The notes beneath the pieces are model-generated. The model saw only the letters and a list, made by a program, of their open reading frames with translations. It searched no databases and was not told the origin of the DNA. A DNA stretch of 64,000 nucleotides, from positions 28,830,001 to 28,894,000 of the forward strand of contig OZ320313.1 of the NCBI GenBank assembly GCA_976226885.1, in the 5' to 3' direction. Positions 9,340 to 56,340 of this stretch are shown here, in pieces. Positions within the stretch are counted from its first letter, which is position 1. Each line of letters opens with the position of its first letter. The position numbers and the translations under genes are program-made. This DNA comes from Iphione sp. A-MEVVRFRX5. Its lineage: Eukaryota.

Positions 9340-9349
9340 CTCATGTTCA

Positions 9350-15925: not shown

Positions 15926-17191
15926 CCACAACTACAGATTTGTACAATCACTATCATCTCTACTATCAGAGGCCTGGTGGGGTCACAGACCGTCTCACTC
16001 ATAGATCAAAGCTACTAACCCTGACTCCCGGTGTTGGAGGAGAGGCCATTTTCAAAATCTGCGTCATTTGTGTTTGCACCGGACCCTGACCGACAAGAGG
16101 GATGTCGTAGCTCCCTGCTTTGCAATAATCAGTAGGTCTCCTCAATATGGCTGATAATAAGTTTCCTTCCCAGCACACGTGGGGCTATTTCTGGCCCACC
16201 TAAGAGAAGCACTGCAAGGCGCCGTTTCCATAGAGCCGAGCTCTGTAGTTTATTCTCTCGTCTGCCAAAGTTAAACTAAAGCAGTGTTACTTTTGATAGT
16301 TTGTATACCGAACACGAGGTTATCGGTGGTAAGGCGTAATGTAATCAAGAAAAAACATTTTTTTTCAAAAGGTAGTCATTTCATGCATAAGGAATGTTAT
16401 CACAATACAAATTGTTATATCGAGGTAAAACCATAGCATGTAATGAATCTTTTTATTAAGTAGTAGTGAATTAGTAAATGGCATGCTTAATAGATTGGAA
16501 CTATTTTTTGTTTGTAAAGAAGTTGTTTGGATTCAGATTCCAGTTGGCGATACCTTCCAAGCCGTTAGAATTAAAAAAAAAAACGTTCGCTATAATCGAT
16601 CTGCGCTGCATGCAACGGCAGCAACAATCACCACAACTGCCTTATTCACTGCGCCATATTAAGCGTGAAGACCCAGCTGCCCTATACCATGGCTCTAGTC
16701 CACGTGCCAAGCTGCTTCACCTTGCCGCCACTCTCTCTCTCTCTCTTCTTCGCAGACCTCAGGTGAGTAGCTGTGGTTAGAGTCACAGTTGTCTCACAGA
16801 GCAGCAGTGTCGCTTCTTTTGTTGACACTGACGTTGAAAACAAGAGGTTCAGACTTGCTGCACAAAGACCATACCGTTTGGCTGCAGCGAGAGAAAACAC
16901 GGGATTATTGTTTAAAACCTGACTTGAGAGCGTTGAGTCATCTTGTTTGGTGTACGTGACAGATTGGTTCCAGGACGTCTTTCCAAGAGCTATTCGTCTA
17001 GACCATATATCCCGGTTGCTGACATTAATGTGTTATTGAGGACCATCCCTTGTTCCCTACTTCGGTCACGGAAGGGCGGCAACTGACCGGATTTCGGGCG
17101 GCCGCGGGCGGCATCTGGCATTGTGTACGCCCCAGGTTCCGAGTAGAGATTAGCGCAACTCACTGGGTGTCGCGCGAGACGCCACGTGCCT

Positions 17192-17239
17192 GCCGCCGCC
17201 GCCACTGCCACTGCCGCCGCCGCCGCCGCCGCCGCCGCC
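17192..17239 (+). repeat. (GCC)n trinucleotide repeat, including a pure (GCC)9 at 17213-17239
   Basis: Read directly from the sequence. Confidence 0.95.
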
Positions 17240-17734
17240 TCAGCCACCGCTGGCAACAAGAAACGCCTGGCGCTGTTGCAGCTGCCATCGCCACCGCCGC
17301 TGCCACCGCTGCCGAACATTGCTGGCACCGCCCGCCCACCTATCGCCCACTTCCCATCTCCCCCACCCGACCCGACCGCCAAGCTAAAGGCTGAGATCGT
17401 GCAGTGCGCGTCCCTTGCACGTCAGACAGAGCGCAGCAGACAGTCCACCTGCATACACGCGCGCGCCCGTACGAGCCGCGAGCGTACGATCAGGCCCGCC
17501 CCGGACACACCGTTAGATTACTCCAACACGGCGAGTTCGGTGAGCCAGCCAACGACAATTATCGTCGCTATCCCCCGGCAGCAGCCGATCCGTCCCCTAC
17601 CACCAGGAGTGCTCACTGTCAGCGATTAAGGCCGCACCAACCACTCACTGTCGGCAACATTCAGATGCGTACGTCTCAATGTGCGCCCAGTCGCCGTCCA
17701 GCTCCGGCGACGGCTTAGTAGTCTAGCAACAACA

Positions 17735-17837
17735 ATGGATACTGCTGCCCAGGTGAGCTCGGCGCCCGGAGGCGCCCACCTGGCCAGCCTCCTGCCTGCT
17801 CTCCTTTGGATAACCTTGCTCCAGGTCAACACAGCAG
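17735..17837 (+). CDS. Exon 1: signal peptide MDTAAQVSSAPGGAHLASLLPALLWITLLQVNTA
   Basis: ACAATGG Kozak context. First in-frame ATG after the in-frame TAA at 17627. Hydrophobic core LASLLPALLWITLL with an N-T-A cleavage region. Donor CAG|GTAAGT, phase 1. Confidence 0.78.
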
Positions 17838-20800
17838 GTAAGTACTGTTGAAAATGATATAAGGTTATGGTGAGGTGTTTTTCACGACTGAATGGGTTGG
17901 TTTCCTCCATGGAGCGCTACCACCTACCTCTGGAAGAGCCTGTAGCTAGCGACCGGTCTCGTCGAATGATGGTTGATAGCGGTAACACATGCATCGTGTC
18001 ATGGCCAGCGGGACTTGACTTCATTATCAACGGGCACACCTGGCGCCTGCCTTTGTAACCCATGCAGGAGAAGGGTGCACCTTGATGCTTGCCAAAATGG
18101 GCGTTCGTAACGGGTGACTTTTACGATAGGGAGAGCTGAGACCCCGGCCCTCCCTCTCTCCTTATGCCATCCCTGCCCACCGCGAGACCGACCCGCATTC
18201 AAGGCTGCATGGTGTGCCGTCAACGCCCCGGGATTAATATGGAGGGAGGTTAAAGGAAGGCGTGGCTAACGGATGAATTAATTCTTCTCTGAGATAATTG
18301 ACAATCGAAGCGTTCGTCGCTTCAGACGGAGTAAAAAGACTTCCATTTAACAGGGTTGCTTTGACCCAAATCCCTTGTCTCAGCAGCCGATCGAGCGACG
18401 TACGAGCGTGCGAATGTGCGACAGAGGCACAGAGTGATAGCGGCCCCCCATTGTATTTTGTATTGACGAACGGAATAAGTCTCATCCAGCCCATCCTCAT
18501 CATTTTCTGTCTGAATCCTAAGCCGGGTTCCACTGTTTCATCGCAAAGTGGTCGAGTCTCTATCCAACCAAGGCAGGGGGGCTCGCACCAAACATCCGAC
18601 GGTCGCCCTCCCACAAACAAGAGAGGGCTGGGCGGCCTAAATATTCGGCAGTCGGCAGAATGTCGGGGCCCCGATGTTTAGAAATCGTGGTTTGAATGTC
18701 GGGAGACGCGCAGACGTCGCGTGGTTGTGTTTACACTGGACGTGCGTCGCGTGCGCGGAATAAAACGCGCGCGAGTTGAAGGCCAGTGCTGGGCGCGGCG
18801 GAGGCGGCGGCGGTGATGACCACAAATACTTGTCTTACTAATACAGACGCCTCCCCGCAAGAAAGGATTACAAGACCATTATCCGGCACAAATCTCCGTT
18901 TTATCCTTATGTATGAGCCGGGACCTCCCCTCCCCCTTTTTTTTCCTTCTTTGGTCCGACCTAGGCCTCGCTTAAAAGGCAGCCGGTTTGAACCATCTGC
19001 CTGGATGACATTTAGAATCGACCCAGAGTCAATCATCTAATCCTGCTCGGCAATACAGCCATTGACACAGGGATTTAAAGTTAATTAGGCAATGATCGAT
19101 TCCTAATGGCCAGGATGGGATGCGTGTGATGTTTGCTTTCAAATAAAACATGAGATGGCTGCTCTTACAAAAACGTACAGAATATCGGGACCGGTGGGTA
19201 TCCAGAGTTATGTGTAGCTGCCAACCTTATTCTACTTAAATTGAGGAGTCAATCTTAACTGGATATACGCTGAGGTTTTATCCAGGCGAATTGTACAAAT
19301 ACATGAACGTGTTTGCTTGCTGTTGAGCATAGTTTTCCATGGCGACTGTCTATACCTGACTTGGCAATACATCAACCATGTTCGCTCCCGAGGGTAACGC
19401 AGGCTTGAGAGTCTGTTTCGCTGGTTGAGATATCTTTACAGTAACACTGGCAGCACAGGGGTGGGCAGCGCCAGATTCACATGGTTGCATAGACAGGAAA
19501 TAATTGCCATCTTGTTCAGCTAATTGTTGGCCCATTAGGCCAATTATCAAACAGATTGGGTCACGGTGTAAGGACATGTGTTGACGCCACCGCTTAACAG
19601 AAACAGGTAGTGCTACTCCGACAGGGGTCGGGACCATCGCTGGCATAATAATGAGATCGAGACAAAAGATCCCTCGCCACTCGGAACACCAACACTCACC
19701 ATGCTGTCGACGCCTTTAAGACCGACGCAAATCTAACCACTTATGAGCTAGAGTTGTCCTGGTAGCAGGAAAGCTCCCTCGCTGGAGATGCGCAACTAAG
19801 ATGGCCCAAATCTCATGATCAGCGGAGGTTAGTCGATCTGGGTCGGGTCAGAGGGCGGTGGATATCTCACGATTTTAGGACACAACAGATGACTCTGCAT
19901 CACTGACTTTAACGTATCGAGTTTAAGTTATAAACTGCCCACCACTTTGAATTGTGTGACAGCTAAGATCTCTAGCAGGACTCAGGTCCGTGGCCGAGTC
20001 GTGGTGACTCATCAGCAAATCTCAAACGGTGGCATTCTACTCTAAATCTCAGTGATGAATGCTTACCTTGCTGGTTATGCAGATTCACGCCACCTTGTTT
20101 CTAGTAAATATCTAATTAGTTTTTCACCAAAGAAACACAGCAAGCAGTCCGACACACTTTGTTTGGCCCAGCATCTGAACATACGAAGCAGCTTTATTTT
20201 GTGGTGCGCATCCCAAGTGATTCATGAATAGGCCTTAAGTCACTGATGACAGGGATAACTCACCTAGGTGGGTCGAAACACTCGGTTCTGTCCCTGTCCT
20301 ACGAGATAGATAATAACTTTAGATCTCATAACTTGGGACATGAAGACGCATTACCTTTGCGGTCCGATGTTTTTGTCTTTTGATTATAGCGAAGAAGAAA
20401 TTGGGATGGTGAGAAAGACTAACACAGAGTATACAGTATTTAAATAGCCCAAAACAGGAATATGGTTTCATTTAAATACTATAAGGAGAATCATGGCCTT
20501 CACAAATTACTTATGCATAATACAATTACAATGTACATGATGCAAGATAAACATGTTTGCAGCGAGGTGATGTCGCTAAGAAACGATATTACATGTGAAG
20601 TTGAAATGAATGCGTGTACGGCCTACGTAATCAATTAACCTTTCATTGTGAGGCCACCAATACATTAATTCGGATAGTGCTGCCTTACGACACTTGTTCA
20701 ACGCAAATACATTAAAGAGTTTGAAGGACTCTAATTTGAGGTTGTTCTGGCGGCGCCGATGTAAACAAGTGATCATTGTTGGGGCATCAGTACATGTGTA

Positions 20801-23800
20801 TTAAGCTGGGATGGTGCTATGTACCTCACAACTATTCTCACAATCAACTCCATACGTGTGACGAGAGAATTTACCCGAAATTCCCACATTTCTATTTCAT
20901 CAGTCTGTTTCTCTTTAGGCCTAAAAAATAGGTGTGTTTCTGGTAACGACCAGACCAAAACCTAGATATGGAGGAGGGTAATTTTTTTCATTTTTCCACT
21001 TTTCCCTCTGGTTTTCAATAATAGTTAAGACAATATGAAGAATTTTGATCAGTTTGCAGTTTTTTGCTGAATTTCCATGGATGTTGTTGTTCTTCTACTG
21101 AATTTACCAAAAACATGTGCTGTGAAAACTTGTACATAAGAAAATTCAGCCTTAAAACTCTTTAGGGCCAAAAATATTTTAGGTAGGGTGAGGTTTTACT
21201 AGGTAGCTGTAGGTTACCAGAAAGACAACTTTTTTTCGTTTTGGCCTTAGTTAGCTTGTCTGCTCTGCATGTTCGTGCTATGTAACAAATTAAGGCTTAA
21301 CTGCAATATTAGGATGTACCATCAACATTTGAAATGACGGACATTTTTTATATTCTGCTGAATCTAGTTAAATCCCTACCCTACAGTTAACAGCATTTGT
21401 GTAGTATATACGTACAATATTGTGTGGTTCACCCATAGGAATAAATTAAACGTACATAGTTTCGATTTTAATCAGTTATAGTCAAAACCTATACATCAAT
21501 TAATCTACTGAGCGATAAAGTTTTTAGAGTCTGGAACCTGAAGTGGATAAAACGGCATACATCTGCCGGTCTGAGTGATCTCATTGGCTCTGTGATGTTA
21601 CTTCTTGTGATGTCACTTACACTGGTAGTGTATTCCTGACAGTAGGCCACGTGCCTGTCTATGAGAAGGCCACAGATGGTTTTGCCAATGTAAAAATGCC
21701 ATGTACTAACCTGAGGAAACAACAAAATATCCAATCTACACACTCTAAATTTCCCGAACATGACACTCGGTCTCGGTCCCCATGTAGATCTGAATGCATT
21801 CGATCAGTCACGACAATTCGAAGTATACATATAGGTATATACATTGTATTCTGACCACTTCACTCAGTCGTAGCATTCACCATGTGCTTCACCATTACGC
21901 TAAATCCTATGTAAGGTTGAGAGCACTGTTTTCTAGGCCGAATTATAAACTGAAATACATGTACATGTATTGCCATTACCAGTTGAAGATGACTTCAAAC
22001 TGTGTCAAACGTTAAGCAGAAAGCTTTAATTAACTTGAAATTATGACAATTCTATCGTGGTATGACCTTAGTAAAGGTAATAGTCAAAATTATGTTGACA
22101 TTAATGGAACGCTCATATTGTCGATGCAATTGGTTTTATACTGAAGTGAAGTAGAATAGTTTAGGTTTGTTGCCCTCTACACTTATGATTTCTTCTATTG
22201 TTTACTTGATAAATTTGTTGAACGTTCATGCTACAATATATATAAATATATGCAATGTACATGTATACACAAGTTAGGAATTCTATATTTTATTTCTATT
22301 TTCCCCATTTGATGACACACACCAAGTTCACGATAATTTCACGTACCCCAACCAAAATATCAGAACATTGAGAAGATACGATCAGCGTATAGAATGCAAG
22401 CACATATGCATTATCATCATCTAAATTATTGGCCGCGTCAGCGGGGAGAAAGAGATGTGGAACGGGGATAGCCGGTCTGCTATCATGCCTTACATGATAA
22501 AGCCACAAAGCCGGATATCAGATAGGATGGTAGTGGGGACCAAACTCAATAAAGGAAAAACCACCTCCTCCAGCAAGCACACACGTCGCACGGAGGGATG
22601 ATTGTGAACGAGGCCCAGCTATCTGGCGGCATAGATTGCTAAGACTGGAGCCCGTTTACCGGATTATGTTGATCCCTTTTATATCTGCTTCCCATGGAAC
22701 GCCCTCCCGCATCCCGCCGGAGGCCCCTATATCCCACGACCACAATAATCCACACCACTCCCCAGGTAGAGAGCGCCGATGTTGTAGCACCGACCGGCGG
22801 CTAAAACGCAACGCCATTTATCAGGAACACCTGGCACTTCAGAGGCGACATCCCGTGACTCGAGATCAAAGATCGTAAAAGCAAACAAAGCCATGCACAA
22901 CATTGTTGTGATCCAGAGGGCACTAGGTTCCGGGCAGCCTTCGATTACTGCTTTGATAAAAACGTTATAGCGGACATCGAGCGAACCAGATATCCTTCCG
23001 TGTCCGTGTCCGTGTTATAGATATTGAATTATTAAGCGGCATGGGTATGAGTGGTTTATTCAACGTTTCTTTATCGGCCAAAAGAGAGAGGATCAACGTA
23101 GCTGGCAGGGGTTAGAGGTAGTAACATGTTGTATGATGTGACAAGGGGATCGATGCCTCATCTTAATGGCCACATTGTAATAAGAGTTATAAATAGAATT
23201 ACAATTAGACAGAATTATCCTAATTTGAACAAACTAATGTGCCAAAAATAGAGACGTTCGTTAAAATGTCCCCTGGCTTTGCTGTAACGTAGCTCCATGA
23301 TGACAGGCTGGATCACAAGTAACGATCGCCGCCCAGCGTACCTCATATTGCCCCTAGCAATCTTATTGTCATGTTCTGTGCCAATATGTATGTATTTATG
23401 TGCGTACATCATAGTGTGCAAGCGTTAATTGCTCTAATCAATCAATGCGAAAGACGCTACGCCTCGCGTCTTGATATATTTTTTTTTGGGGGGGGAGGAG
23501 AGTTGGAGACTGTCTGTTTTTCACCTCGTGACACATCTTCTGGGAATCAAAACAATGCCTTTAATGAGCAGACCAGATCAGGCTCAGGTTACCAGGGCGA
23601 CCCTGACGTCTCGGTTGCCGTATTCAACGGGAGGCTCTTGACTATGTCCTCTCCTCGGCTTTTATTGAAAATCCTGCAGTCGGCCGTGCAATGACAGACG
23701 CGCCAGATAAAGTTATGTAACCCCCCAAGCACGCTGAGTCACGCGTGGTAATCACACACTTGTGTTGCATGATGCCCCACCGTTGCCGCGTGCATGTCTG

Positions 23801-38800: not shown

Positions 38801-41800
38801 TCCTACGTGTGAGACCGAACTAAATTTAGAGAAAGCCGGGGAAACCTACGCCCAACCGGTTCTTCCAAGTCTAGACTAAAGACTGGAAATGTGTAAATGT
38901 ATTTGAAAATCGCACAAAGGAAAGTCCTCTTTGGGCATGGCCTTTTTATATATAGTCGTCTCAGAGTTTTCCTATCTTCAGTGGACCTGGGCGAGTACAA
39001 ACTATAGGCCTACATGCGTCACCGGAGAAATGCATACTTGCGGCAATATATTCATAAAAAGTCGCGACAGCTAGCTTGGATTAGAGGAAAACGAAACATA
39101 GAAGCAATAGAGACAGAGAAATTGAGGAGAGGCCGTGAACCACAACTTAGAAAGATGTCAGGAAAGGAGAAGACGAAGCGTGAGGGGACAACAAAGATTT
39201 ATACCTAAAAAGCCCAGGGCACATTTATAGTACATGATGGTAGCCACTGGGGATTTTCTTGCATCCACTATTTATAGACATAAGCCGGATGGTCAAGACG
39301 AATCAAAGCCAGCAAGGAGGAAGGGCACAGACTGCTGGCGCCTATCGCCCAAGGTGTTGGCGGGCCCAGCTGGCAGGCTCAGTGGGGAAGCGCAGCTCCG
39401 CCAGTGTTCCTGCGGGCAAGGCGTTGATCCGTTGTGACGTGCGGCGACCCTCTGTCCGGCCCGTGCCCCACACGGCCAGCCCCACTGCCAACTTCTTCCT
39501 CTCCGTGACTACTCGCACCCCTTCACTGGTCTTGAATCATCGGCTGGGTCTCAGCTGTTGAGCGCCGTATCTCGGCTCTCGCTGTCACTGACATGACAAA
39601 AATCGGTTTCACCACGTAACCTCTGGTTAAAGAGGATTTGAATTCTCTGCTAAAACATATTTTCATTCCTATTCCTTATCCATCTGATTTATTCCCCACG
39701 ATTCCTTCGACATAGACTCATATATAGCTCTACTTTCCCATGAAAACTCACCTTTCACCTTCTCTGCTGTCGGTCTGCCTCNNNNNNNNNNNNNNNNNNN
39801 NNNNNNNNNNNNNNNNNNNNNNNNNNNNNNNNNNNNNNNNNNNNNNNNNNNNNNNNNNNNNNNNNNNNNNNNNNNNNNNNNNNNNNNNNNNNNNNNNNNN
39901 NNNNNNNNNNNNNNNNNNNNNNNNNNNNNNNNNNNNNNCTTTGTTTGTTTTTTCTTTCGGCTACTCGCGTTCTCTGCACCTCGCTCTNNNNNNNNNNNNN
40001 NNNNNNNNNNNNNNNNNNNNNNNNNNNNNNNNNNNNNNNNNNNNNNNNNNNNNNNNNNNNNNNNNNNNNNNNNNNNNNNNNNNNNNNNNNNNNNNNNNNN
40101 NNNNNNNNNNNNNNNNNNNNNNNNNNNCCCCTCCTCGCTAGCACTATCTCTCTATCTCTCACAGTCACTTCCTGGCATCATCTCGTCACGCCACGCTAAC
40201 TTCTGGCGCCAGTGTATCCTGCCACCACGCTCCCTCAACCGTCGAGTCATTACTGTCTGACATCTCTTTTAGCCATTGACTGTCTCCGTTCAGGCACTAA
40301 GCCAGCATTCAAGTGCCAGTTGTCTGCGGTACCACTCGGCGTTGGCGCCACATCCTGACTCACCCGCTGACCGTTGCACCTGATTGCTGTCTCACCGCCC
40401 GAGCCACCCTCCTGCCCTCCAGTGGCCGCCCTGAGTAATATCTGATATTAATTTCGGGTCGGGCTTCGCTTGGTAAACTGAGACTAAATACACAGGTGGT
40501 ATCGTCGCACTCCACTACTCGGGGCTCTGAATCAGCAGCACTCAAAGCGGGCCCTACACCACAAACCAGGCCCTAAAAAAAATTTAAAGAGAGGTCCTCC
40601 TCAACCCCAACATGGCTCTTGTCACCGCTCTCTATTGTTCCTTCTCGTCGTGCGAAAATTTGGCACAGCGGGGGAACAATGGGCGAGTAAATTTATCTGT
40701 TGACCTTGTTGGATGATTAAATTAGAGGAGCGTGACTAAGGTAAAATATGAACCTCAATTAATCCGCTTAACTCAGAATTTCAAGTAGAAATATGAGTCG
40801 GTCGTGCAAAGACGGGAGAAGAGCTTTGACCTTTGGAAATATCTCAGTTTACAGACACGTGGAAACGTTGCGAGCGGTAGTACGGCTGTATCATGCCACC
40901 AGGCTAAGTTTGTGAGCAGAACCCTACGTTTGACCTACTCGATCGTGTCGTGATGAATTGAGGGATAGGTATCCCGCCGTAGTCCTAGAAGGCACGTCAG
41001 AAATATGCGCAGTTGGCCGCGCGTGCCGAGCAACTAAGTAGCAAATTGGCTCATTTATGTGATTACACAGCATTAAACAAAACAATGGTTGAGACGGTGC
41101 TGGCTGGTATAGTCGCAGCATCCAGCTGTCCCGAAACCCTCCTACCGGTGTGTTGTGTCACAAAGAGCATGACTGAAGGGACCATCTGCCCGCGTCCGTC
41201 AGACGCAGTGGGCGCGACAGAACTGCGCCCTATCGGGTTTATGTATCAACGACATGCAGGCTGGCCATTGTGCACGCCACGCCTAATTGGACAGCGTTGA
41301 GTCATTATGCCGACTTACCAGGAACGGTTGCTGCCATCCCACCTTTAGAACTCCACCCAAAACTAACACCGTAATTATCATAGAGACTATACACCGACTC
41401 ATATATTATTGACATGAAACAGCTATAGACCCGCGTATTCCCGAAATAGCACTTACATGTAATCAAGCTTGGAGAGCTTGATTTACAGCGGTGGTCCTAG
41501 TACTAGCCGTATCAATGTCATTTGCTTGCGGTGGGCAGATTCAGGTGGGCTTAATGACATGGCGTCGTTCATGTTTGTGTACGGAGGTCACCGGTTCAAA
41601 CAGGAGCTAATCATGGAACTCTTGTGCAGACGACAATGAAACTGCTGCATCTTTGGCGCGTACGGCCGGCCTGACTTCTCAGGTGATGGCCTTCTCTAGT
41701 ACGTGAGTAGTAAACGAAATGGGGTCGAGGTGGCCATTTGCACATCCGGGGTCGCCGGTATTGACACTCAAGTAGTCGTAATGTAGACGGGCAAAGTCCG

Positions 41801-47800: not shown

Positions 47801-50800
47801 CTGCAACTATAGACATGAAGTGTTACAATGTATGTGTATACAGACGGGGATCTCATAATCTAATGAGTAGCTTCAGCGGAACTTGTTACAGTCAGGCAAG
47901 TTTCCGTGGAGGATGGTGGAAAACTCATGGCCAGCAGGGACATGCGGTTCCTCTGAGAATTTTATGAATTACGTTTGTCCTTCGTCCGTGTCCATGTATT
48001 ACTAGAACACGAACAATCCATACCGATAATTGTGGAGACCTAGACTTACGCAAGGATATTGGGAGCCGCGGCGGTCGCTCAAAGCCCACCGAGGCAATAG
48101 GTTCTGCTCTAAATTGAGTTTGAAATATTGGCTTCGAGCATCAATAGCAGCATTATCAGGACCTTCTACGTTTATTAGGTAAAATCGGATCTTGCTGTGT
48201 ACGGCAGTACATCAGGCTTCCTAATAGAGCTTTGAACGACATTCTTGTGTCTTCAGTTGCGTACGTATATCTCTCTGTCAGATATTCAGAAAAGAACGTA
48301 TGAGTAGATCATAACCTTTTCAACATTCCTTAATAATAGGAGCTCCGAAAAAGTGTTGCCAGTAGTGTTTTGAAAGGTTGGTATAAACACCAGGGCAGCT
48401 GCTGCCATGTATTATACCTACTGGGGGGAGTAAGCGTTTGGTGTAGACATTCCATGAATCATGTAAGCACAAATGGTAGAACCTGTAGCAGAAGCGATAT
48501 CACGTAGAGATACGACATACATGTACATGATTAAGTACATGTACAATATACATACGTGTACACGTGAGAGTATTTTGAATGACACCCCATTGTCACCTTA
48601 CAATCGCCCATGCACGTGCCGGACTGGAGCTCATATGTCAACGCCCTCAGTGCTGGTATCCTAGGGCGTCGACAGGGGGCGCAGATGGGCAGTAAGAGGC
48701 TGTGCCACGTGACTGCTCGACGGGATTTCGCCGCTGGCGGAGAGGCCCGCATCTCGACCAGCTTTTACCTCACCCCCAGAACGATCACCACCCATCATTG
48801 CTAGCTATACCTCCCGACCCCCTACCACTAGCCTACCGACCGAAACCAATTACTAGAATTTTCGGGGTGATACCTCTCGTCGCGCCTGTTACATCCTGTA
48901 CACATACCCAATGATATGCGCATTCGGCTGTTCATCAGCGCAACCCTAGTTGGATCAGTGGCTAGATTTATCTTTCTTGTTGTTCTAAAAGTGGGGTATG
49001 CCCGTCCATGACATTGTGCACCCTGGATGTTGAAAACTACTTCAAGTAGGGGGTCCCTTTTAAAATGTCATACCAGATTTGTCTGACGCTGCGCAGGTCT
49101 GAAGCTGATGTGAAAATCTGTTTAGGTTCCAGTTACATCTTATTTGGGAGGTTGACGTAACCTGATACATCGTAAAGTTGCTGTATTGGTCTTCCCGCTT
49201 CTTATTAGGCAAGTAAATACACTCTTGCTGGTCCCTGCAGCGCGCCTATTTTCGTTTAGTATTGTACAAATTTCTGCGTCCCGTATAGACGCCCGCTCCA
49301 TGAAAAGATCGTTAATGATAGTAATTTCATCCGTGAGGGTGAGAGGAGCACCGCACGGGACATTTTTTCCATGCGAGTTTCTGCGAGTGCAATGTCGAGA
49401 TGATGGTGCGTATGACTGGGCGTGGCTTTTCCTACAGCGAGCTACTGTCCTTCGCCACTCCCACTTCCCTCGCCCATTCCAAAGGTCGTGATATTGAAGG
49501 CCCCATAGCGTTCCTAGCCTGGGGATATAGATCACACGCAAAAAAAATCACACAGAATTGGGCTCAAATCTGCCGACAATGGTTCCTGATAAGTGAATAT
49601 CTAATCAAATCTGTAGTGGGACTTTTTTTGTAGCAGGTTATCTCGAACATTCGGCACTGCTCACCAAAAGTGTGAGTAAAATTCAGTTCGACATGCCAGT
49701 TCATCTGGAAAACTGTTCCAATAATTATCTTATAGTTGTCGAGAATAAATTTGTCTTTTTTCCCTAGCAGCAGGACATTGCCATCATGTGGGTTCATGCA
49801 GTTGAGAAGCTGCAAGTACGAAAGAGAATTAAGAAAATGATGAATGCTAGGATATTATTTTGAGAAATGTTGGTCTTGCCATCGTCCAATTTCTTTTTAT
49901 CTCTAGCACTAAGAGCATCGGTTCTCTATTCTTCCATGTAAAATAACTTCTCTGTGATTGTCGGGCCGTCGAAATCAGCCCATTGATCTCAAGTCAGCAC
50001 ATGTATATACAGAGTATCGGACGGTGCATCTCTCTGCCTGTTTCCTGTTCCGTTGTTACCCTGAATCCAAACACTAATTTAGAACCATTTTACCGGGCCA
50101 CTCCCACACAAGGGACAAAAAATATGAGACCAAAGCATGGTCGTAAAAATGAACGATAATATATAAACGGTGATAGATGTAGAAACTGGCGCGAGCGGCG
50201 CCGGCTGTCGACCGAGGGAGCCGTAGCTCAGTAGGTGGTGCCCCACTCCATGTTACTTCAGACGGCGCATGGAAGACGTTCAGTGATTTTTAGTTCATTT
50301 TCTTTCAGGGTTGAGTCAAACATTAACAAAATGACCCTGACGTCCACGTTCAGATTCCAAAATAACTCTAAATAAGTACTTGTACTACCGTTTGTCGGAG
50401 GGTGCCACGTCCAGAATTTGTTTGCTTTTATAGGACTTTTTTCTAAAGTGATTGCATTGATATAATTATTTTTTAAACGTCTGTTGATTCTTCCCCAATT
50501 AACATGTCCTTTGTCCTGTTTTATCCCCGTTAAAATATCAAAGACTGTAATAAAACAAGTAAGCAAGTAAGTGAGCAATTGCAAATTCCTGAGTCTATCC
50601 AAAGACATTTCCTTGCTGATAGCACCCCTACAAATACAAGGCTCGTGTCAACACCCTGTGAGAAGAAACTCCCTGTTTGAGCAATTAACTGACACATCCG
50701 CTGTGGGCCGCAGTGTCCTCTGGCGACGAGGCGGTGAGATCAGACGAATTAAAGGATCCACGCTCTTCCAGACCATTTCACGTCCAATGTTAATTGTGTT

Positions 50801-53800
50801 GAATGGAGAATGAAGCGATCGATTGAGCAAATAGCAGGCCATGTACAGTGCAATGAGCTGCTCGGAGTGGCTACCCGACGCCACCCCAAACAAGACAATA
50901 GCGGACGGTGGGTTGGACGAGGAGGAGGAGGGGATGGGAAATGACGCACAGAAGGGACGCACAGATTGAACATGCTATTGATGACCTGGGAAAGAGGCCC
51001 TCTTGCTTAGCTTCAGATTACACCAATTTTCTCCGCTTTAGAAGACTGGGTATAGACATAGTTTGATGTGTTTACGCGTCTCCTGTTATGGCGACCAGGA
51101 TTAAGTTCAGCTTGTCACATATTAGATAGTTGGTGCGGCAAGGCTTGACCGAGGCCAATCTGTACGAAGTCATTCCAGCGTTTGAATTTCCCCGAGAAAG
51201 GAAAAGGGACACTGAGATGTTGCAAATGAATAGCACCCCCCCCCCCTCGGTTGTATGGGGGTATATGAAATCAACTTTTGATATGATTCTGGTGATTCTA
51301 GAGCTTAAATTTTGGAGAATTTTCTCAACCGATAGTTTAAACAATTTTATTATAGGACAGATTGCATAATACAAGCCCGTAGCCAAGGAGGTATCGGGGG
51401 CATCGTCCCCCACAAAAGCCAGGAGTTGCACCTCTCTAGGCCTATAGCCAAGGGTGTATCATGAGAAATGCACAGGTTTCCTGTCCAAGGTTAGCAACAA
51501 TTCTCATATTTTTTTATTTTTGCAACCGAACTGTGGATGGATGGATGGATGGATGGATGGAGGGAGGGAGGGAGGGAATATGGAAATGATTCTGATGGTA
51601 GTGAAAGTATAATTAACACATTTGCATGGTGAAATATTCTAAAGAGTGAGTGATCTCTAACCTCTCTAACTAGGAGTTTCACCTCTCTAACCAGAAGTTT
51701 CACCTCTGTAGCTAAGAGTTCCACCTCTCTAATTTGAAATACACCCCAAAAGACTTCCTGGCTACGGGCCTATAATACGTGTTGTCTATCTGATTATATG
51801 ATTTCTTAATAGGTTTATTTAATAGCGCTACATTAGAGGTGTGTTTTGTTCTTGGCAGATGCTAAGGAGTACCACCTGGCTATGCCAGACGCGGGATGTG
51901 CCTCTCTAACCACTCTTGGTGCTACGGTGGACATTGTATGTCAGTACTTCGACTTCAACGACTACAGCGACGACGGCACCGGACCATCGTCGTCGGGGCG
52001 TCAGTCGCGGGACCCGGCGGCGCGTGGTCGGTCGACGTCGGCGCGTGGAAGCACCCGGGAGCCACCGTGCACCGTGCAGGCCATCCAATGGCAGCGGCTG
52101 CGTGTGGGCGGCGTCTACAACATCAGCGACTCGGCCAAGTTCGGCGTGTGGTCGGCCATCCCGGGCTGGGGCATGCAGCGTGCCGAGCATGTCAGTCTAC
52201 TACGCGTGCGCCAGATGCGGCCCGAGGACATCGGCACCTATCGCTGTCAGCTGATCTGTGCTGAGCTTAACAAAGCCGGACATCGGCAGATACTGGAGCG
52301 AACTGCACACCTCGCCCTCCGTCAGCCTAACAAGCAGTACGGTAAGCACTCTTAAGCATTTTCTTGAAACTTTACAGTATGTATGTAAGTAAAATAGCAA
52401 CTCAGAATTAGGAACACTAAAGGAAGTACACAATTTTGCCCTTAAATATTGTGAGCTGTCCTGCTGCCTGAATTATGTCATGGAACACAAGCCAATGTGA
52501 CCAGCATAACTTGCCCACAAATCCTTAGTTGCCCTCTTAGGCTGGGTGTCTATATGGGTGTGTCTCTGTGGCAGTCCATGCGTGAGGATGTTAGGGTGTG
52601 TTTCTGCTAATCTGATAACCACTGTATACACACCATGGAGCATTCTTGAAGTGGGAATGACATCACAGTGGTTGATAAGGCTGGTACCCTTAGTCAAATG
52701 TAGGTCAGTCTGCCTTGGGTGGAGGTGAAAGAGAATGGGTTTCTCTCTTTAAGCCATTATAATGTTTATGTCCATAATAATCATTTGGCTATGATTTCAA
52801 TGCCAAATCTGATATTATAATGAAAACACATCTAGAACTACCTGTAGATAGACTTCATATGTCAAAATTATCATCAGTTTGTTTTCACCAGGCCTTAGAA
52901 TTCACATTAGATTATGCAGAAAGTCCCTGATTATCACCCACTTTTCACCTCTGTAGTGTTTTTGCTAAATTAGAAATTTTAACAGAGGATTTTTATCTAA
53001 ACACTAATGTGGTCCTTTAGATTAATATTAAACCTACACATTTATCACAATGCAACCCTGTGACACCTTTGGAATCCTTATCAAATCGGGTGTGACAACT
53101 CTTTGTTTACACCTTGCTGACAAAAAATGCCCGGATTCTCCACTGCAAGAATGTATTCATGTTTTCATGCTCACATGCCTGTTATAATGATTATGTCCAA
53201 AAAACATGCCACAAACATAGACTGACAGGCACCGTGTAGCATGGAAAATAGAACATTTCCCATTTTTTAAACACAGCCACACAGGGACATGCACAGACAT
53301 GCACAGACACGTTTACATGGGTATGCTCCTCCTCTTATCATTGTTCCCAAAATACATGTTCACAAACACGCACACACAGACATGGAGACATGCATGCATG
53401 GAAACCCTCCCTTAGTTGAGATGCTCTCAAGGAGAGTTGCTGCTGTATATACAGGCATTCCTCACTATCTGCATACTGGCCGTTTTTAGCAATTTCATCC
53501 GGATAATTAAATATCCAAATAAAATAAACATGCAAGTATAGAGAATGTCATTTGTTTGCTTGAAAAAACAGCATCCAGATAATAAGTAAATCCGGATATC
53601 AAGTCTGCCGATAACAAGATTTGGCTGTATACTATCATTACCAATTATCTGCCATGCATGCAATATATTTAGAAATTTGAAGAATGCTGTCCTCAATATC
53701 AGGGTTTACACAAGTTACATAAGTTGTAACCATGCGTTACCGAATAATATACATGTACATGTACACTGTCATTATTCATTTCAGTCTGTCAATGCGAATC

Positions 53801-56340
53801 CCTCGAAGCAACTTTCTATGTAGAATACCACCCTGTGCAAAGTCTTCAGTCTGCTTTCTTTTTTCAACTAAACAGAAACACGTGTATATAAGGCTCCCAC
53901 CTGCGGGTAATAAACTAACAGGGATCCACGATGCAAAAGTTTAGCATACCTCCTCTGATTGGCCGGATTTCCTCCCCAGATGTTTTCCCACATTCTTGTT
54001 TTTAATTGGCATCTTTTAATAAGATGAGACGCTGGTCAATGGGCTCAGTATGTAGGATATTTATCTAGAACGACAGGTGATGAGAGGAGGGAGAGATAGG
54101 GAGAGACAAACAGATCTTGTCCAGCAGTGGTAATGATGTCTAAACCATGCCCAGGAATTTCATTTCTGTGAGATATCAGGAAAGGTATAAAAAGCATAAC
54201 AAGATTTTTTTTAATGATTATACTTGGTGTATATATTGTAACGAATATTAGTCCTTATAGATAAAAGAATAAACTCTTCAATTCAATCTAATTCACTCGT
54301 ATTTTAATAATGGGTCCGCATGTGGGTGACTCATGGGGAGTTATTGGTGAACACGGCTTGGCCCTGTGTGGTCAGCTGTGCCCTGACCGCCAAACCCAAG
54401 TTATGCATGTGGCTAATGAGCACTGTTCGCACTACTTAACGCTGTCCATAAAAGTACGTGTATGCCTTATAATATGAACGATGGGGAAGTACATGTGTTA
54501 AAATGTAAGATACGTATACATGTACATGTAAAACGAAACCTATTTCATCCAGTCTGTGGATGTTGAGTGAGGCTCTAATTGAAACAGTTTTTAGGCTGTA
54601 AATATAAGATGCTATTGCTGTCTTTTGGAAGCTGCACTTAGTGACTTTCGTATGAATTTATTATTTTGATAACTTGTTCTTACAGCCATCCGTGGCCTCA
54701 GCCTGGAGGACACTTTCTGCGCACGCTCTTTCCTCGACGGCGTCTGCCAGCTGGAATGCGATTCGGAGCGTTATCTGTACGACGGCTACGACTGCACGAC
54801 GCGACTCGGTCGCTGCCCGGACGACGACGTATGCAAGCCACGCTTCTTCAACGGCTTCTGTGATCGCGAGTGCGACACGCGCGAGTGCGGCTGGGACGGC
54901 GGCGACTGCATACACACGACGCTGCGAGTCGTCGACGGCACGGTGGCGCTGTTCCTGGCGCGCCGTCAAGCGGCGGTTACCGTCAACCTGAAGGCGCTGG
55001 GCCGGGCGCTGACCGCCCTCTTGCAGACTCTCGTCCGGGTCTTACCCGGCGACTGGAACGGCCCGCACCGGGACGTGCAAGGCAGAGGGAGTTTGTATGG
55101 TGCGCCAGCCGAGCCTGCTGGAGCAGCCTCCGCCGAGCAGCTCGAGCACGTGCTCTTCTTGCGAATCGACAATACTAAATGCAAAGGAAGCTGCATCAAG
55201 AGTGCCGAGAATGCCGCGCACTTTATCGCCCTCGCACTACAGAAGGGTTGGGATCCTGGTATAAGCGTGACCGCCGTGACAGGTGAGCCTTCCCCTTTAA
55301 TCACAGTTCGTTGGGAATTGTATGCACACGTACAGCCACGTGTCAACATGTAATTATCTAACGTTTGAAAATATCAAACTATAGATAAATATAACCAACT
55401 TCTGATATCTACCAAATAGTTTGTGCCTAGCGTACGTCTACGTGTGTGCTGTTGTAATTCGTACACACTAGTATCATTAGTAAACCACTGACTCATTGTT
55501 GTTACCTGAGTCACTCTGCCTTTCATTGAAAAGGACTCTATCCAAAATAACCTGGCGTTTTTTAACGTCGCAATGAACTTCTTTTTAATCTCAGTTCGTC
55601 GCAAGCATTAAGAACAAGATTAATCACAGAAGACTATGAGAACTATGACGTAGACAATGAATGTTGTTTGATGACGAGCCTATGAACCAAATCTCATGAA
55701 CTTAGACCCCCACCCCGAAAAATATTCAAGACCAACTGCTTCAGGACTAGACATGGTGCTGTATAATTGTAGCTAAATCCTCATAACACAGGTCATAGCA
55801 CCACCCGCATGTATGTTATTATAATTCACATGTTTCAATTCCTAATCGTATTCATTGCTAAACATGTCTGTATGTCTCTTTCTGAGTGTGTCTGTCTGTG
55901 CGTCTTTCTTTCTCTGTATTTCTCTCTTTGTCTGTCTGTCTGTGTGTCTGCCTGTCTCTCTCAGCAAATGAATAACATATTCGGTATCCTTTCCCACAGT
56001 GATCAGCAAACTTCAGTCGGACGAGGAGTGCCCCATTGAGAACAACACTTTGCTCGACATAGATCTCGATTCTGTCGACAGGGGGCAGCCCCACAGTAAC
56101 GGTGGCGCCGCCTCTGGCGGCGAGGGGGAAGGCTTCCTGGGGCTGGGCCTGCAGCCGTGGGTACTGATTGCCGCGGTGGCCAGCGGCCTGGCCCTGCTCC
56201 TCCTCATCTTGACTCTGACCCTGGTCACCTGCCGCATGCTGACGCACCGCCATAAGCGGCGCCGCCGCGATTCGTTCGACCTCTACGACTCGACGGCGCG
56301 AATTCGTTCCGAGAAGGGACCGCCTGGAACGGACGTGTGA
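17735..56340 (+). CDS. Spliced gene, join(17735..17837,51859..52341,54686..55282,56000..56340): 507-aa type I membrane protein, SP-Ig-LNR-LNR-NOD-NODP-TM-PDZ motif (Notch-NRR-containing receptor, not Notch)
   Basis: 103+483+597+341 = 1524 nt = 507 codons plus TGA. All junctions are GT..AG phase 1 and frame-compatible. Coding exons are GC3-rich against an AT-richer background. The domain order is coherent. Exon 1 is assigned across a 34-kb intron by phase and signal-peptide logic, so it is less certain than exons 2-4. Confidence 0.88.
20917..21247. mobile_element. Non-autonomous TIR element (MITE), unclassified family, short copy
   Basis: Left AGGCCTAAAAAATAGGTGTGTTTCTGGTAAC is an imperfect inverted repeat of right GTTACCAGAAAGACAACTTTTTTTCGTTTTGGCCT. 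About 130 bp of the left arm is homologous to 61537-61670. Confidence 0.75.
24480..24610 (+). promoter_or_regulatory. Intronic CpG-rich promoter/enhancer-like cluster (CCAAT, CRE, ETS-like)
   Basis: CCAAT at 24491. Palindrome CGTGACGTCACG at 24571-24582 containing the CRE TGACGTCA. Extra TGACG half-site at ~24564. CAGGAAG at ~24591. CpG-dense context. Motif evidence only. Confidence 0.4.
25940..26229 (-). mobile_element. tRNA-derived SINE
   Basis: Minus strand reads GTGGAGTTAGCTCAGTTGGTAATAGTGCTG...GAGGTCACAGGTTCAATCCTG. Pol III A box (26209-26220) and B box (26158-26167) are present, but there is no clean acceptor or anticodon stem, and a non-tRNA body follows. The 3' boundary is approximate. 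Confidence 0.7.
34332..34344 (+). promoter_or_regulatory. CTCF-type motif CCACCAGAGGGCG
   Basis: Exact match to the core consensus CCASYAGRKGGCR inside a CpG-rich intronic segment. Confidence 0.45.
37050..37680 (-). mobile_element. CR1/L2-type LINE fragment (post-RT thumb region)
   Basis: Minus ORF 37403-37603 contains VNVYRYLGVVLDQNLSFD...ILKTVSYKLYYFHKVR, the conserved YLGVxxDxxLxF...K motif. Degenerate C-terminal residues follow. Confidence 0.75.
39782..40127. other. Two assembly gaps or masked runs (39782-39938, 157 N; 39988-40127, 140 N)
   Basis: N runs flanked by CT-rich sequence. Confidence 0.99.
42736..43062. repeat. 94-bp tandem repeat (about 3 copies plus a partial) inside the MITE
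   Basis: CCCCAAAATCACTATGAAAAC recurs at 94-bp spacing (T anchor at 42744, 42838, 42932). Each unit carries GGCGACCGCCGGCGACCGCCGG. Confidence 0.95.
43103..43295. repeat. 31/33-bp tandem repeat, 6 copies, inside the MITE
   Basis: TTCAGTTAACTTGGACTTTTTCCCCATAATA starts at 43103, 43136, 43169, 43200, 43231 and 43262. Confidence 0.95.
51662..51733. repeat. 21-bp tandem repeat, about 3.5 copies
   Basis: CTCTCTAACTAGGAGTTTCAC variants at 51662, 51683, 51704 and 51725, about 125 nt upstream of the exon 2 acceptor. Confidence 0.9.
51859..52341 (+). CDS. Exon 2: Ig-like domain (V/I-set-like) with a long BC-loop insertion
   Basis: Acceptor TTGTTCTTGGCAG| and donor TACG|GTAAGC. B-strand VDIVC, C-strand IQWQR, E-strand SLLRVRQM, canonical F-strand EDIGTYRC, G-strand RTAHLAL. 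Sequon NIS. Confidence 0.93.
54686..55282 (+). CDS. Exon 3: Notch negative regulatory region (2 LNR + NOD/HD-N + NODP/HD-C)
   Basis: Acceptor TTGTTCTTACAG| and donor ACAG|GTGAGC. Translation gives FCARSFLDGVCQLECDSERYLYDGYDC and CPDDDVCKPRFFNGFCDRECDTRECGWDGGDC (LNR). VVDGTVALFL...LKALGRALTALLQTLVRV parallels Notch NOD. VLFLRIDNTKCKGSCIKSAENAAHFIA...ISVTAVT parallels Notch NODP (VYLEIDNRQC...CFQSA..VAAFL...KIEAVQ). The supplied ORF track shows only the 3' part in this frame (from 54943). Confidence 0.95.
56000..56340 (+). CDS. Exon 4: stalk, transmembrane helix and 35-aa cytoplasmic tail, with stop codon
   Basis: Acceptor CCTTTCCCACAG|. TM WVLIAAVASGLALLLLILTLTLVTC (56158-56232). Basic stop-transfer HRHKRRRR. 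C-terminal GTDV then TGA. Confidence 0.93.

What the first reader, a model, noticed from the sequence alone, without database searches (positions are those of the whole stretch)
17735..56340. Natural synNotch-like receptor: a single Ig domain fused to the Notch NRR switch, TM and a PDZ tail
Seen: a clean 4-exon, 507-aa ORF with SP-Ig-LNR-LNR-NOD-NODP-stalk-TM-short tail and no EGF, RAM, ANK or PEST sequence. Established: in Notch the NRR is an autoinhibited mechanosensor that exposes the ADAM S2 site under ligand pulling, and engineered synNotch receptors swap an antibody Ig ectodomain onto this core. LNRs alone occur in PAPP-A and GNPTAB, but I know of no characterised protein with LNR+NOD+NODP outside Notch. 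Inference: evolution has repurposed the Notch force/proteolysis switch for an Ig-recognised ligand and a CSL-independent output, or as an adhesion or decoy molecule.
Basis: partly seen in the sequence, partly recalled or inferred. Interest (0 to 1): 0.95.

Follow-up and report, generated by a model that had tools for sequence, protein, structure and literature searches.

The report
Orphan Ig-plus-Notch-switch membrane protein family
This is an intact gene for a single-pass membrane protein that joins one antibody-like domain to the "safety-catch" module otherwise known only from Notch receptors; it belongs to a conserved, uncharacterised family found in annelids, brachiopods and bryozoans.

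Summary
Four GT/AG exons with phase-1 junctions give a 507-aa open reading frame: signal peptide, V-set-like Ig domain, two LNR repeats plus a Notch HD (NOD/NODP) domain, a 52-aa stalk, a TM helix and a 35-aa tail ending in TDV. There is no EGF, RAM or ANK sequence in the window. Both N gaps lie inside the 34-kb intron 1 and touch no codon. Only the link between exon 1 and exon 2 depends on the scaffold.

Exon 3 folds as a Notch NRR (pLDDT 86; Z 19.7 to human NOTCH1 NRR 3eto). The architecture is not a one-off. Proteins with all three homologous parts occur in Owenia, Capitella, Lamellibrachia, Lingula and Watersipora. Paralvinella has a partial model. One member comes from an Arctic metatranscriptome, and four unlabelled genomic loci show the same exon order. 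Database names are all automatic, and I found no paper describing the family.

The NRRs of this family form their own clade apart from canonical Notch. Function is inferred only. Three features argue against a simple Notch-style force-gated S2 cut: LNR-A is missing, the stalk is 42-52 aa against 12-13 aa in Notch, and an invariant stalk cysteine appears to need a partner. I read it as a CSL-independent recognition or adhesion receptor anchored to PDZ scaffolds, with a Notch-derived shedding or stability module. It is a new variant of a known kind, and it can be tested directly.

The parts
17735..17837 (+). Exon 1: start codon and signal peptide (34 codons + 1 base), donor CAG|GTAAGT
   Evidence: It is the only phase-1 signal-peptide-like ORF with a 9/9 donor match upstream of exon 2. 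It lies in the GC 0.54-0.61, CpG o/e ~1.0 peak at 17-19 kb. There is no homology support, as expected for a signal peptide.
39782..40127 (.). Two assembly gaps (39782-39938, 39988-40127) inside intron 1
   Evidence: They are flanked by CT-rich low complexity and are not part of any exon. Only the exon 1 to exon 2 linkage depends on the scaffold here.
51859..52341 (+). Exon 2: V-set-like Ig domain with five Cys and a window-specific ~30-aa low-complexity loop insertion (about 51958-52066)
   Evidence: It is homologous to the N-terminal domain of Owenia, Lingula, P0004 and Watersipora. AF2 pLDDT is 75.6 with a nine-strand beta pattern. Foldseek top hits are CD96, IgNAR V and SIRP-alpha. No plausible cryptic intron lies in the insertion.
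54686..55282 (+). Exon 3: whole NRR-like module
   Evidence: Pfam LNR x2 + NODP. PDB phmmer E 3e-19. AF2 pLDDT 86. Foldseek and VIA-align match Notch1/2/3 NRR with Z up to 19.7.
54718..54795 (+). LNR-1 (equivalent to Notch LNR-B), four Cys only (C1 and C5 missing), D-G-x-D Ca-site motif kept
   Evidence: Alignments. The C5 position is non-Cys in every family member.
54814..54909 (+). LNR-2 (equivalent to Notch LNR-C), six Cys, CGWDGGDC
   Evidence: invariant C49, C58, C62, D70, G71, D73, C74 of the exon-3 translation.
54910..55282 (+). HD (NOD/NODP, SEA-like alpha/beta sandwich) with a disordered loop where Notch has S1, the HD disulfide CKGSC, and a last strand ...GISVTAVT ending at the exon border
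   Evidence: low pLDDT at 127-135; model end aligns to NOTCH1 ~1723, next to S2 A1720/V1721. The phase-1 intron after V-x-G is at the same place in L002, L003 and L005.
56000..56157 (+). Exon 4, stalk of 52 aa with invariant Cys and the conserved motif C-P-I-E-N-N-T-L-L-D-I-D-L (56029-56067)
   Evidence: The motif is shared with Owenia, Paralvinella, Lamellibrachia, L002 and L003.
56158..56232 (+). Transmembrane helix WVLIAAVASGLALLLLILTLTLVTC, with a small-residue-rich N-terminal half conserved in the family
56233..56340 (+). 35-aa basic cytoplasmic tail ending G-T-D-V (class I PDZ-ligand form), plus stop codon
   Evidence: C-terminal GT[DHN]V is also found in Paralvinella, Owenia, Capitella, Lamellibrachia/L005 and L003. 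There is no Pfam hit and no W-x-P or ANK.

Best explanation
What it is (shown): an intact member of a conserved but uncharacterised family of type I membrane proteins. The family layout is one V-set-like Ig domain, a two-LNR Notch-type negative regulatory region (LNR-B-like, LNR-C-like, HD), a 42-52-aa stalk with a conserved Cys/N-glycan/acidic motif, a conserved TM helix, and a short basic tail ending in a class I PDZ ligand.

How it most likely works (inferred): it is a cell-surface recognition or adhesion receptor held at PDZ scaffolds. The Ca2+-dependent LNR clamp over the SEA-like HD domain controls the stability or release (shedding) of the ectodomain. Its output is CSL-independent, through loss or gain of adhesion and PDZ-anchored complexes, possibly followed by gamma-secretase clearance of the stub. 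It does not deliver a nuclear transcription factor.
For: Gene model and domains.

NRR fold: pLDDT 86; top 14 hits are all Notch NRR; Z 19.7, 171 residues, rmsd 3.3 A against the autoinhibited NOTCH1 NRR.

Ig fold. The ESM model of the Owenia orthologue also matches a V-set domain over residues 26-147.

Whole-length homology to Owenia, Capitella, Lamellibrachia, Lingula, P0004 and Watersipora.

Same exon order (Ig, then NRR, then stalk/TM/tail) in independent genomic loci L002, L003/L004, L005 and L006.

RNA evidence: the complete uninterrupted ORF P0004 sits on a 2007-nt contig from run ERR6338309. That run is an Arctic eukaryote-fraction metatranscriptome (PMC11922315).

Conserved features: LNR Ca-site motifs, cysteines lost in correlated pairs, the stalk motif, the TM helix and the GT[DHN]V end.

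Phylogeny: the family NRRs form their own clade (SH-aLRT 99 for 23 rows including the window, 94 for 25 rows) apart from canonical Notch.

Tail: no RAM, ANK or EGF anywhere in the window.
Against: No functional or expression data exist for the window's organism.

Regulated shedding is inferred only by analogy with Notch and SEA-like switch domains (PMC6586460; bioRxiv 10.1101/2024.07.10.602225).

AF2 may reproduce the closed NRR conformation simply because Notch NRR structures were in its training set.

Cysteine parity leaves the stalk Cys with either an Ig-domain partner or an intermolecular bond: five Ig Cys plus one invariant stalk Cys. The first would let force bypass the NRR.

Exon 1 linkage crosses two assembly gaps.

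The PDZ ligand is a motif match only.
Confidence: 0.5

Rival explanations
1. Full Notch-like mechanotransduction. A ligand bound by the Ig domain pulls the LNRs off the HD. An ADAM then cuts at the S2-equivalent strand (TA|VT), gamma-secretase releases the 35-aa tail, and the tail signals.
For: The closed NRR fold superposes on autoinhibited NOTCH1 with its last strand at NOTCH1 ~1720-1723. The TM helix is conserved and rich in small residues, and the tail has a polybasic stretch. SynNotch and SEA-domain chimeras show that the NRR module is portable (PMC6586460; 10.1101/2024.07.10.602225).
Against: LNR-A and the A/B linker are absent. The A|V dipeptide is not conserved in orthologues (SVGA, MVSI, GVGV, SIGV). 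The HD end lies 42-52 aa from the membrane against 12-13 aa in Notch (PMC2726630). That paper also reports that juxtamembrane insertions of 12 or more aa in NOTCH1 deprotect cleavage. The stalk Cys may staple the stalk to the Ig domain. The tail has no known transcriptional module.
Confidence: 0.2
2. A static adhesion or co-receptor molecule. The NRR is only a rigid, Ca2+-stabilised spacer, or itself a binding surface, and no regulated proteolysis occurs. The protein acts like JAM/CAR-type Ig adhesion proteins tethered by their PDZ ligand, possibly as a disulfide-linked dimer.
For: The layout of V-set Ig, TM and a short PDZ-ligand tail fits. An invariant extra Cys pair is available for dimerisation or stapling. 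In orthologues a Cys at the end of the Ig domain probably bonds the orphan C1 of LNR-1, giving rigid Ig-LNR coupling; the window has lost both. The long conserved stalk also fits.
Against: The whole LNR-over-HD arrangement and the Ca-site residues are kept across phyla. That is more than a spacer would need. SEA-like juxtamembrane domains often do act as shedding switches (PMC6586460).
Confidence: 0.22
3. A modulator of canonical Notch signalling, for example a decoy that competes for the S2 protease or for NRR-binding partners, or a cis-regulator at Notch-expressing junctions.
For: It shares the NRR fold with Notch. An Owenia gene called 'notch-like' (OFUSG01867) is an ERK1/2 target co-regulated with delta (PMC9050690). 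Whether that gene is this family's Owenia member was not tested.
Against: There is no direct evidence. No DSL-binding EGF repeats are present. The NRR clade has diverged far from Notch.
Confidence: 0.05
4. Artefact: a pseudogene, an exon-shuffled Notch fragment, or part of a larger gene whose other exons lie in the gaps or outside the window.
For: Exon 1 has no homology support and is separated from exon 2 by 34 kb that includes two gaps. No protein more than 46% identical was found in 1.8 billion representatives, so the gene seems unannotated in its own genome.
Against: The ORF is clean with consensus splice sites. Full-length orthologues account for every exon and need nothing more than a signal peptide upstream. 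An mRNA-derived relative has the same ends. All conserved Cys, Ca-site, stalk and tail motifs are intact.
Confidence: 0.03

Closest known systems
Notch receptors (NOTCH1-4, Drosophila Notch, LIN-12/GLP-1): the negative regulatory region
   Same: The LNR-B/LNR-C plus HD (NOD/NODP) fold is shared: E 3e-19 by sequence, Z 19.7 by structure, rmsd 3.3 A over 171 residues. So are the Ca-binding D-G-x-D motifs, the HD-C disulfide and the type I topology with the NRR on the extracellular side of the TM helix.
   Different: It has no EGF repeats, LNR-A, RAM, ANK or PEST. LNR-1 has two rather than three disulfides. No S1 furin site is conserved. The stalk between HD and membrane is 42-52 aa instead of 12-13 aa. 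The N-terminus is an Ig domain and the tail ends in a PDZ ligand. Its NRR falls in a separate clade.
Engineered synNotch / SNAPS chimeric receptors
   Same: The logic of a non-EGF recognition domain placed directly on an NRR-type juxtamembrane module and a TM helix is the same.
   Different: This is natural and conserved. It has only two LNRs, a long stalk and a 35-aa tail without a transcription factor. Whether it responds to force is unknown.
SEA / SEA-like juxtamembrane switch domains (dystroglycan, protocadherin-15 MAD12, cadherin-23 MAD28, IA-2, mucins)
   Same: The HD part is the same alpha/beta sandwich. After the Notch chains, the next structural hits are CDH23 MAD28 and PCDH15 MAD12 (Z 5.6-5.7), then GPR126/ADGRG6 (Z 4.6) and IA-2 (Z 4.5). 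Such domains can act as shedding switches (PMC6586460).
   Different: Those proteins lack LNR caps. Here the cap is a bona fide pair of LNRs.
Ig-superfamily junctional adhesion proteins with PDZ-ligand tails (JAM, CAR/CLMP, nectin-like)
   Same: They share a membrane-distal V-set Ig, a single TM helix and a short tail ending S/T-x-V. The comparison with these proteins rests on my own knowledge.
   Different: Those have a second Ig domain rather than an NRR next to the membrane. No sequence homology was detected.
Other LNR-containing proteins (PAPP-A, GNPTAB)
   Same: They contain LNR modules (weak hits).
   Different: Their LNRs are isolated and have no HD domain. They are not type I Ig receptors.

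Membership tests
Notch receptor family | Tandem EGF-like repeats forming the ligand-binding ectodomain | tested here: not met
   There is no EGF Pfam hit in exons 2-4. tblastn with long EGF-bearing Notch proteins hits only the NRR exon in 64 kb.
Notch receptor family | Three LNR repeats (A, B, C) | tested here: not met
   Only two LNRs are present, aligning to LNR-B and LNR-C.
Notch receptor family | HD domain (NOD + NODP) packed under the LNRs | tested here: met
   NODP scores 32.3 bits against a cutoff of 25. The fold matches at Z 19.7 to 3eto. The Pfam NOD model itself gave no hit in the window, but it is precomputed on the Owenia orthologue.
Notch receptor family | RAM and ankyrin repeats in the intracellular domain | tested here: not met
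   The tail is 35 aa with no Pfam hit. No ANK exon is found in the window.
Notch receptor family | S2 site about 12-13 residues outside the membrane, buried by the LNR-A/B linker | tested here: not met
   The HD end lies 52 aa from the TM helix here and 42-52 aa across the family (distance in Notch from PMC2726630). LNR-A and its linker are absent.
Ig-NRR-TM family (unnamed; database names 'LNR domain-containing protein', 'protein lin-12', 'notch 1-like') | N-terminal Ig domain homologous to the family's | tested here: met
   phmmer of the SP+Ig part gives Owenia 5e-25, Lingula 1e-16, P0004 8e-12 and Watersipora 3e-5. See also alignment A3.
Ig-NRR-TM family (unnamed; database names 'LNR domain-containing protein', 'protein lin-12', 'notch 1-like') | Two-LNR NRR whose first LNR lacks Cys5, placed in the family clade | tested here: met
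   (column pattern). (the window lies inside the SH-aLRT 99 clade).
Ig-NRR-TM family (unnamed; database names 'LNR domain-containing protein', 'protein lin-12', 'notch 1-like') | Stalk with invariant Cys and the E-N-N-T-x-L-x-I-D-L motif | tested here: met
Ig-NRR-TM family (unnamed; database names 'LNR domain-containing protein', 'protein lin-12', 'notch 1-like') | Short tail ending G-T-[DHN]-V | tested here: met
   The window ends GTDV. Paralvinella ends GTDV, Owenia and Lamellibrachia GTHV, and Capitella and L003 GTNV. P0004, Lingula, P0011 and Watersipora differ.
Ig-NRR-TM family (unnamed; database names 'LNR domain-containing protein', 'protein lin-12', 'notch 1-like') | Exon order Ig, NRR (one exon, phase-1 end after V-x-G), stalk/TM/tail | tested here: met
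Force-gated proteolytic switch receptors (functional class) | Ligand- or force-dependent ADAM cleavage followed by gamma-secretase cleavage | not testable with these tools
   This needs cell-based reporter and inhibitor assays.

The most novel reading that the evidence does not exclude
A natural, evolutionarily old 'mini-Notch'. An Ig domain recognises a ligand on a neighbouring cell and uses a two-LNR NRR as a mechanical or Ca2+-sensitive proteolytic switch. Signalling would go through a PDZ-bound or gamma-secretase-released short tail and would be independent of CSL. That would make it a second, unrecognised juxtacrine signalling system built on the Notch switch, so far found by name only in lophotrochozoans.
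Probability: 0.25. Interest if true: 0.88.

Novelty: new variant of a known kind. Interest (0 to 1): 0.72.

Why it matters
The Notch NRR is the textbook force-gated proteolytic switch and the core of synNotch engineering. It has been treated as exclusive to Notch. Surveys of the pathway discarded proteins lacking EGF and ANK repeats by design (PMC5356439).

This family shows that evolution has reused the LNR-HD module in a different receptor, with an Ig head and a PDZ tail, and kept it across at least three animal phyla. That offers three things:
- a natural test of which NRR features are needed for autoinhibition (two LNRs, no plug, long stalk);
- compact new switch domains for synthetic receptors;
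- an unstudied cell-surface gene for annelid, brachiopod and bryozoan developmental biology.

Tried and rejected
Taxon of the window: not determined.
- Rfam found nothing.
- A search with the LINE-like ORF at 7131-8117 was blank.
- Earlier scan notes disagree ('invertebrate chordate' against 'annelid-type') and are unchecked.

Word-indexed family search: a search with a four-sequence family alignment returned only two of its own members. I relied instead on the exhaustive representatives search and one search with the Paralvinella protein.

ESM Atlas feature search on exon 3: uninformative, best score 0.67.

Cryptic intron: I looked for one that would remove the window-specific Ig insertion. 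No credible GT..AG pair exists.

ORFs inside intron 1: Pfam finds nothing in the larger ones, so no nested gene was detected.

Not done:
- I could not test the 'LSLED plug' idea or the Cys-Cys distances, because model coordinates are not returned and the first 10 residues of the model have mean pLDDT 67.
- I did not fold the full-length spliced protein, because it has no reference id and I did not paste it.
- I did not compare intron positions with human NOTCH1.


Full report
**1. Observation**

The window has two N runs, 39782-39938 and 39988-40127. Translating the four proposed regions and reading the splice sites gives these exons:
- 17735-17837
- 51859-52341
- 54686-55282
- 56000-56340

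All are on the + strand, each exon ends one base into a codon (phase 1), and all introns are GT..AG.

Both gaps lie in the 34-kb intron 1. They are flanked by CT-rich low-complexity DNA, and no codon depends on them. What does depend on the scaffold is the physical link between exon 1 and exon 2.

Exon 2 cannot start translation with a signal peptide, because an in-frame stop lies just upstream and its first Met is internal. An upstream signal-peptide exon is therefore required. Among 713 ATG-started, phase-1, GT-ended ORFs in 1-51858, the one at 17735 is the only hydrophobic candidate with a perfect CAG|GTAAGT donor. It also lies in the window's GC/CpG peak (GC 0.61, CpG o/e 1.0). An alternative leader hidden in the gaps cannot be ruled out.

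**2. Domains**

NRR (exon 3):
- Pfam finds two LNRs (E 3.6e-14) and NODP (E 1e-7). Nothing significant is found in the tail exon.
- Against PDB sequences, exon 3 aligns to LNR-B, LNR-C and the HD domain of the NOTCH1, 2 and 3 NRRs, with E down to 2.7e-19.
- An AF2 model built on a 49-row alignment has pLDDT 86.3 and pTM 0.82. Its one disordered loop sits where Notch carries S1.
- The 14 best Foldseek PDB hits are all Notch NRR chains (TM 0.73 to 3eto).
- VIA-align gives Z 19.7 and rmsd 3.3 A over 171 residues. Model residues 1-198 cover NOTCH1 1468-1723, so the module ends at the S2 strand.
- After the Notch chains, the next hits are SEA-like domains: CDH23 MAD28 and PCDH15 MAD12 (Z 5.6-5.7), then GPR126 (Z 4.6) and IA-2 (Z 4.5).

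Ig domain (exon 2):
- Pfam gives only sub-threshold V-set and Ig hits.
- The AF2 model (pLDDT 75.6; the core blocks score 83-93) is a beta sandwich.
- Its best PDB matches are V-set domains: CD96, IgNAR V, SIRP-alpha and nanobodies. No specific relative appears in Swiss-Prot models.

The window's protein carries a private ~30-aa low-complexity insertion in the B-C region. It is not a missed intron.

tblastn of all 153 retrieved LNR/NRR proteins, including canonical Notch proteins with up to 20 EGF repeats and ANK repeats, hits nothing in the 64 kb except exons 2-4.

**3. It is a family, not a one-off**

An exhaustive HMMER scan of 1.84 billion representative proteins with exon 3 gave 375 hits. 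The eight best are all at most 44% identical. The best full-length ones have the same size and the same layout:

| Organism or source | Protein | Length | Database name |
|---|---|---|---|
| Owenia fusiformis | CAH1798200 | 455 aa | uncharacterised |
| Lingula anatina | XP_013395134 | 481 aa | 'protein lin-12' |
| Watersipora subatra | XP_067946198 | 487 aa | 'notch 1-like' |
| Paralvinella palmiformis | KAK2146925 | 309 aa (partial) | LNR domain-containing protein / hypothetical protein |
| Capitella teleta | CAPTEDRAFT_226756 | 443 aa | LNR domain-containing protein / hypothetical protein |
| Lamellibrachia satsuma | LSAT2_009086 | 395 aa | hypothetical protein |
| Logan run ERR6338309 | P0004 | 463 aa | none |
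| Logan (run not looked up) | P0011 | 430 aa | none |

A probable further member is the Dimorphilus model A0A7I8VCT7.

The Ig part and the tail part of the window's protein match these proteins independently of the NRR.

P0004 is a complete ORF with UTRs on an uninterrupted 2007-nt contig of run ERR6338309. That run is an Arctic eukaryote-fraction metatranscriptome (PMC11922315). The architecture therefore exists at the RNA level.

In four independent genomic loci the Ig exon, the single NRR exon and the stalk/TM/tail exon follow one another on one strand (L002, L003/L004, L005, L006). The NRR exon ends at the same phase-1 position, after V-x-G. L005 is near-identical to the Lamellibrachia protein.

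In an 84-row NRR tree the window sits inside a clade of 23 family rows (SH-aLRT 99). With Owenia and Lingula added, the clade has 25 rows (SH-aLRT 94). Canonical Notch NRRs lie on the other side. The long-branched Watersipora row is misplaced. Rooting, and hence the age of the split, is unresolved.

**4. What is conserved, and how it differs from Notch**

Conserved in the family:
- the Ca-site D-G-x-D motifs of both LNRs;
- the six Cys of LNR-2;
- the HD disulfide;
- a GWDPGI-x3-V last strand;
- a stalk Cys followed by E-N-N-T-x-L-x-I-D-L;
- a TM helix that starts W-[VL]-L-I-A-A and is rich in small residues;
- in six of ten members with a known C-terminus, a tail ending G-T-[DHN]-V, the class I PDZ-ligand form.

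Differences from Notch:
- LNR-A and the A/B linker are absent.
- LNR-1 lacks Cys5 in every member. Its Cys1 is probably bonded instead to a Cys at the end of the Ig domain; the window has lost both together.
- Basic furin-like sites in the HD loop occur in some members (L002 RPRR, L005 RRR) but not in the window.
- The A|V dipeptide at the S2-equivalent position is not conserved.
- The HD ends 42-52 residues from the membrane in every member. In Notch, S2 lies 12-13 residues out, and juxtamembrane insertions of 12 or more residues deprotect cleavage (PMC2726630).

Cysteine book-keeping points the same way. There are five Cys in the Ig exon plus one invariant stalk Cys, and the other Cys are lost only in pairs. 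This suggests the stalk Cys bonds either the Ig domain or a second chain. It is an inference from parity, not a demonstration.

**5. Mechanism**

Shown: a folded NRR-type module sits between an Ig head and a PDZ-type tail in a conserved, transcribed gene family with no CSL-binding parts.

Inferred (my best reading, 0.5): it is a recognition or adhesion receptor anchored to PDZ scaffolds. Its Ca2+-dependent LNR-over-HD module governs ectodomain stability or shedding.

Rivals:
- The full Notch-like chain of force, ADAM, gamma-secretase and ICD signalling stays possible (0.2). The missing plug, the long stalk and the possible disulfide staple weaken it.
- A static spacer or adhesion role (0.22).
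- A Notch-pathway modulator role (0.05). An ERK-regulated 'notch-like' gene is reported in Owenia (PMC9050690), but its identity with this family was not tested.
- An annotation artefact (0.03).

**6. Novelty**

Full-text searches found no description of a non-Notch LNR+HD protein (papers read). The Platynereis Notch survey states that proteins lacking six EGF repeats, three LNRs and ANK repeats were excluded (PMC5356439). That explains how the family went unnoticed even though the Capitella model has long been public.

The sequences are therefore already in databases under automatic names, and the kind of module is known. The combination and its conservation appear undescribed, so I class it as a new variant of a known kind.

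The window's own protein has no representative above about 46% identity, so it is probably unannotated in its genome. I could not determine its organism. All named relatives are lophotrochozoans.

Noticed in passing
window 7131-8819 (+) and 9597-9911 (-): There are decayed transposon remnants. One is a LINE-like ORF set with a weak RVT_1 match (8042-8368, E 8e-6). The other is a pogo/Tigger-type DDE_1 transposase fragment (E 2e-13). The surrounding 5-11 kb has very low CpG o/e (0.08-0.4), against 0.6-1.0 over the gene.
   Followed up: partly
window 16990-17700: A GC-rich stretch (GC 0.61) with GCN/poly-Ala-type trinucleotide runs lies on both strands just upstream of exon 1. It is probably the promoter or 5' UTR rather than coding sequence.
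   Followed up: no
window 51958-52066: A window-specific, CG-rich insertion of about 30 aa of low complexity (Ser/Gly/Arg-rich) sits in the Ig domain's B-C region. It is absent from every orthologue and is modelled as disordered.
   Followed up: partly
L005 (ENA ERZ21939214 ctg10660l) 7925-11483: This contig of an assembly filed as a metagenome encodes a protein near-identical to Lamellibrachia satsuma LSAT2_009086. It is therefore tubeworm host DNA, not microbial.
   Followed up: partly
L003 and L004 (ENA ERZ26052449): Two contigs of one assembly carry the same family gene with identical NRR exon products. They are probably haplotigs or a recent duplication.
   Followed up: no
L006 13150-17086: A MADF-domain ORF and a DDE_Tnp_4 (PIF/Harbinger-type) transposase ORF lie 3-7 kb downstream of the family gene in this locus.
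   Followed up: no
literature, Owenia fusiformis OFUSG01867: A gene called 'notch-like' is an ERK1/2-dependent marker of posterodorsal ectoderm in Owenia (PMC9050690). Whether it is the Ig-NRR family member CAH1798200.1 is unknown.
   Followed up: no
window 39939-39987 and gap flanks: Only 49 read bases separate the two N runs. Those bases and both outer flanks are CT-rich low complexity, which suggests an unresolved simple repeat.
   Followed up: no
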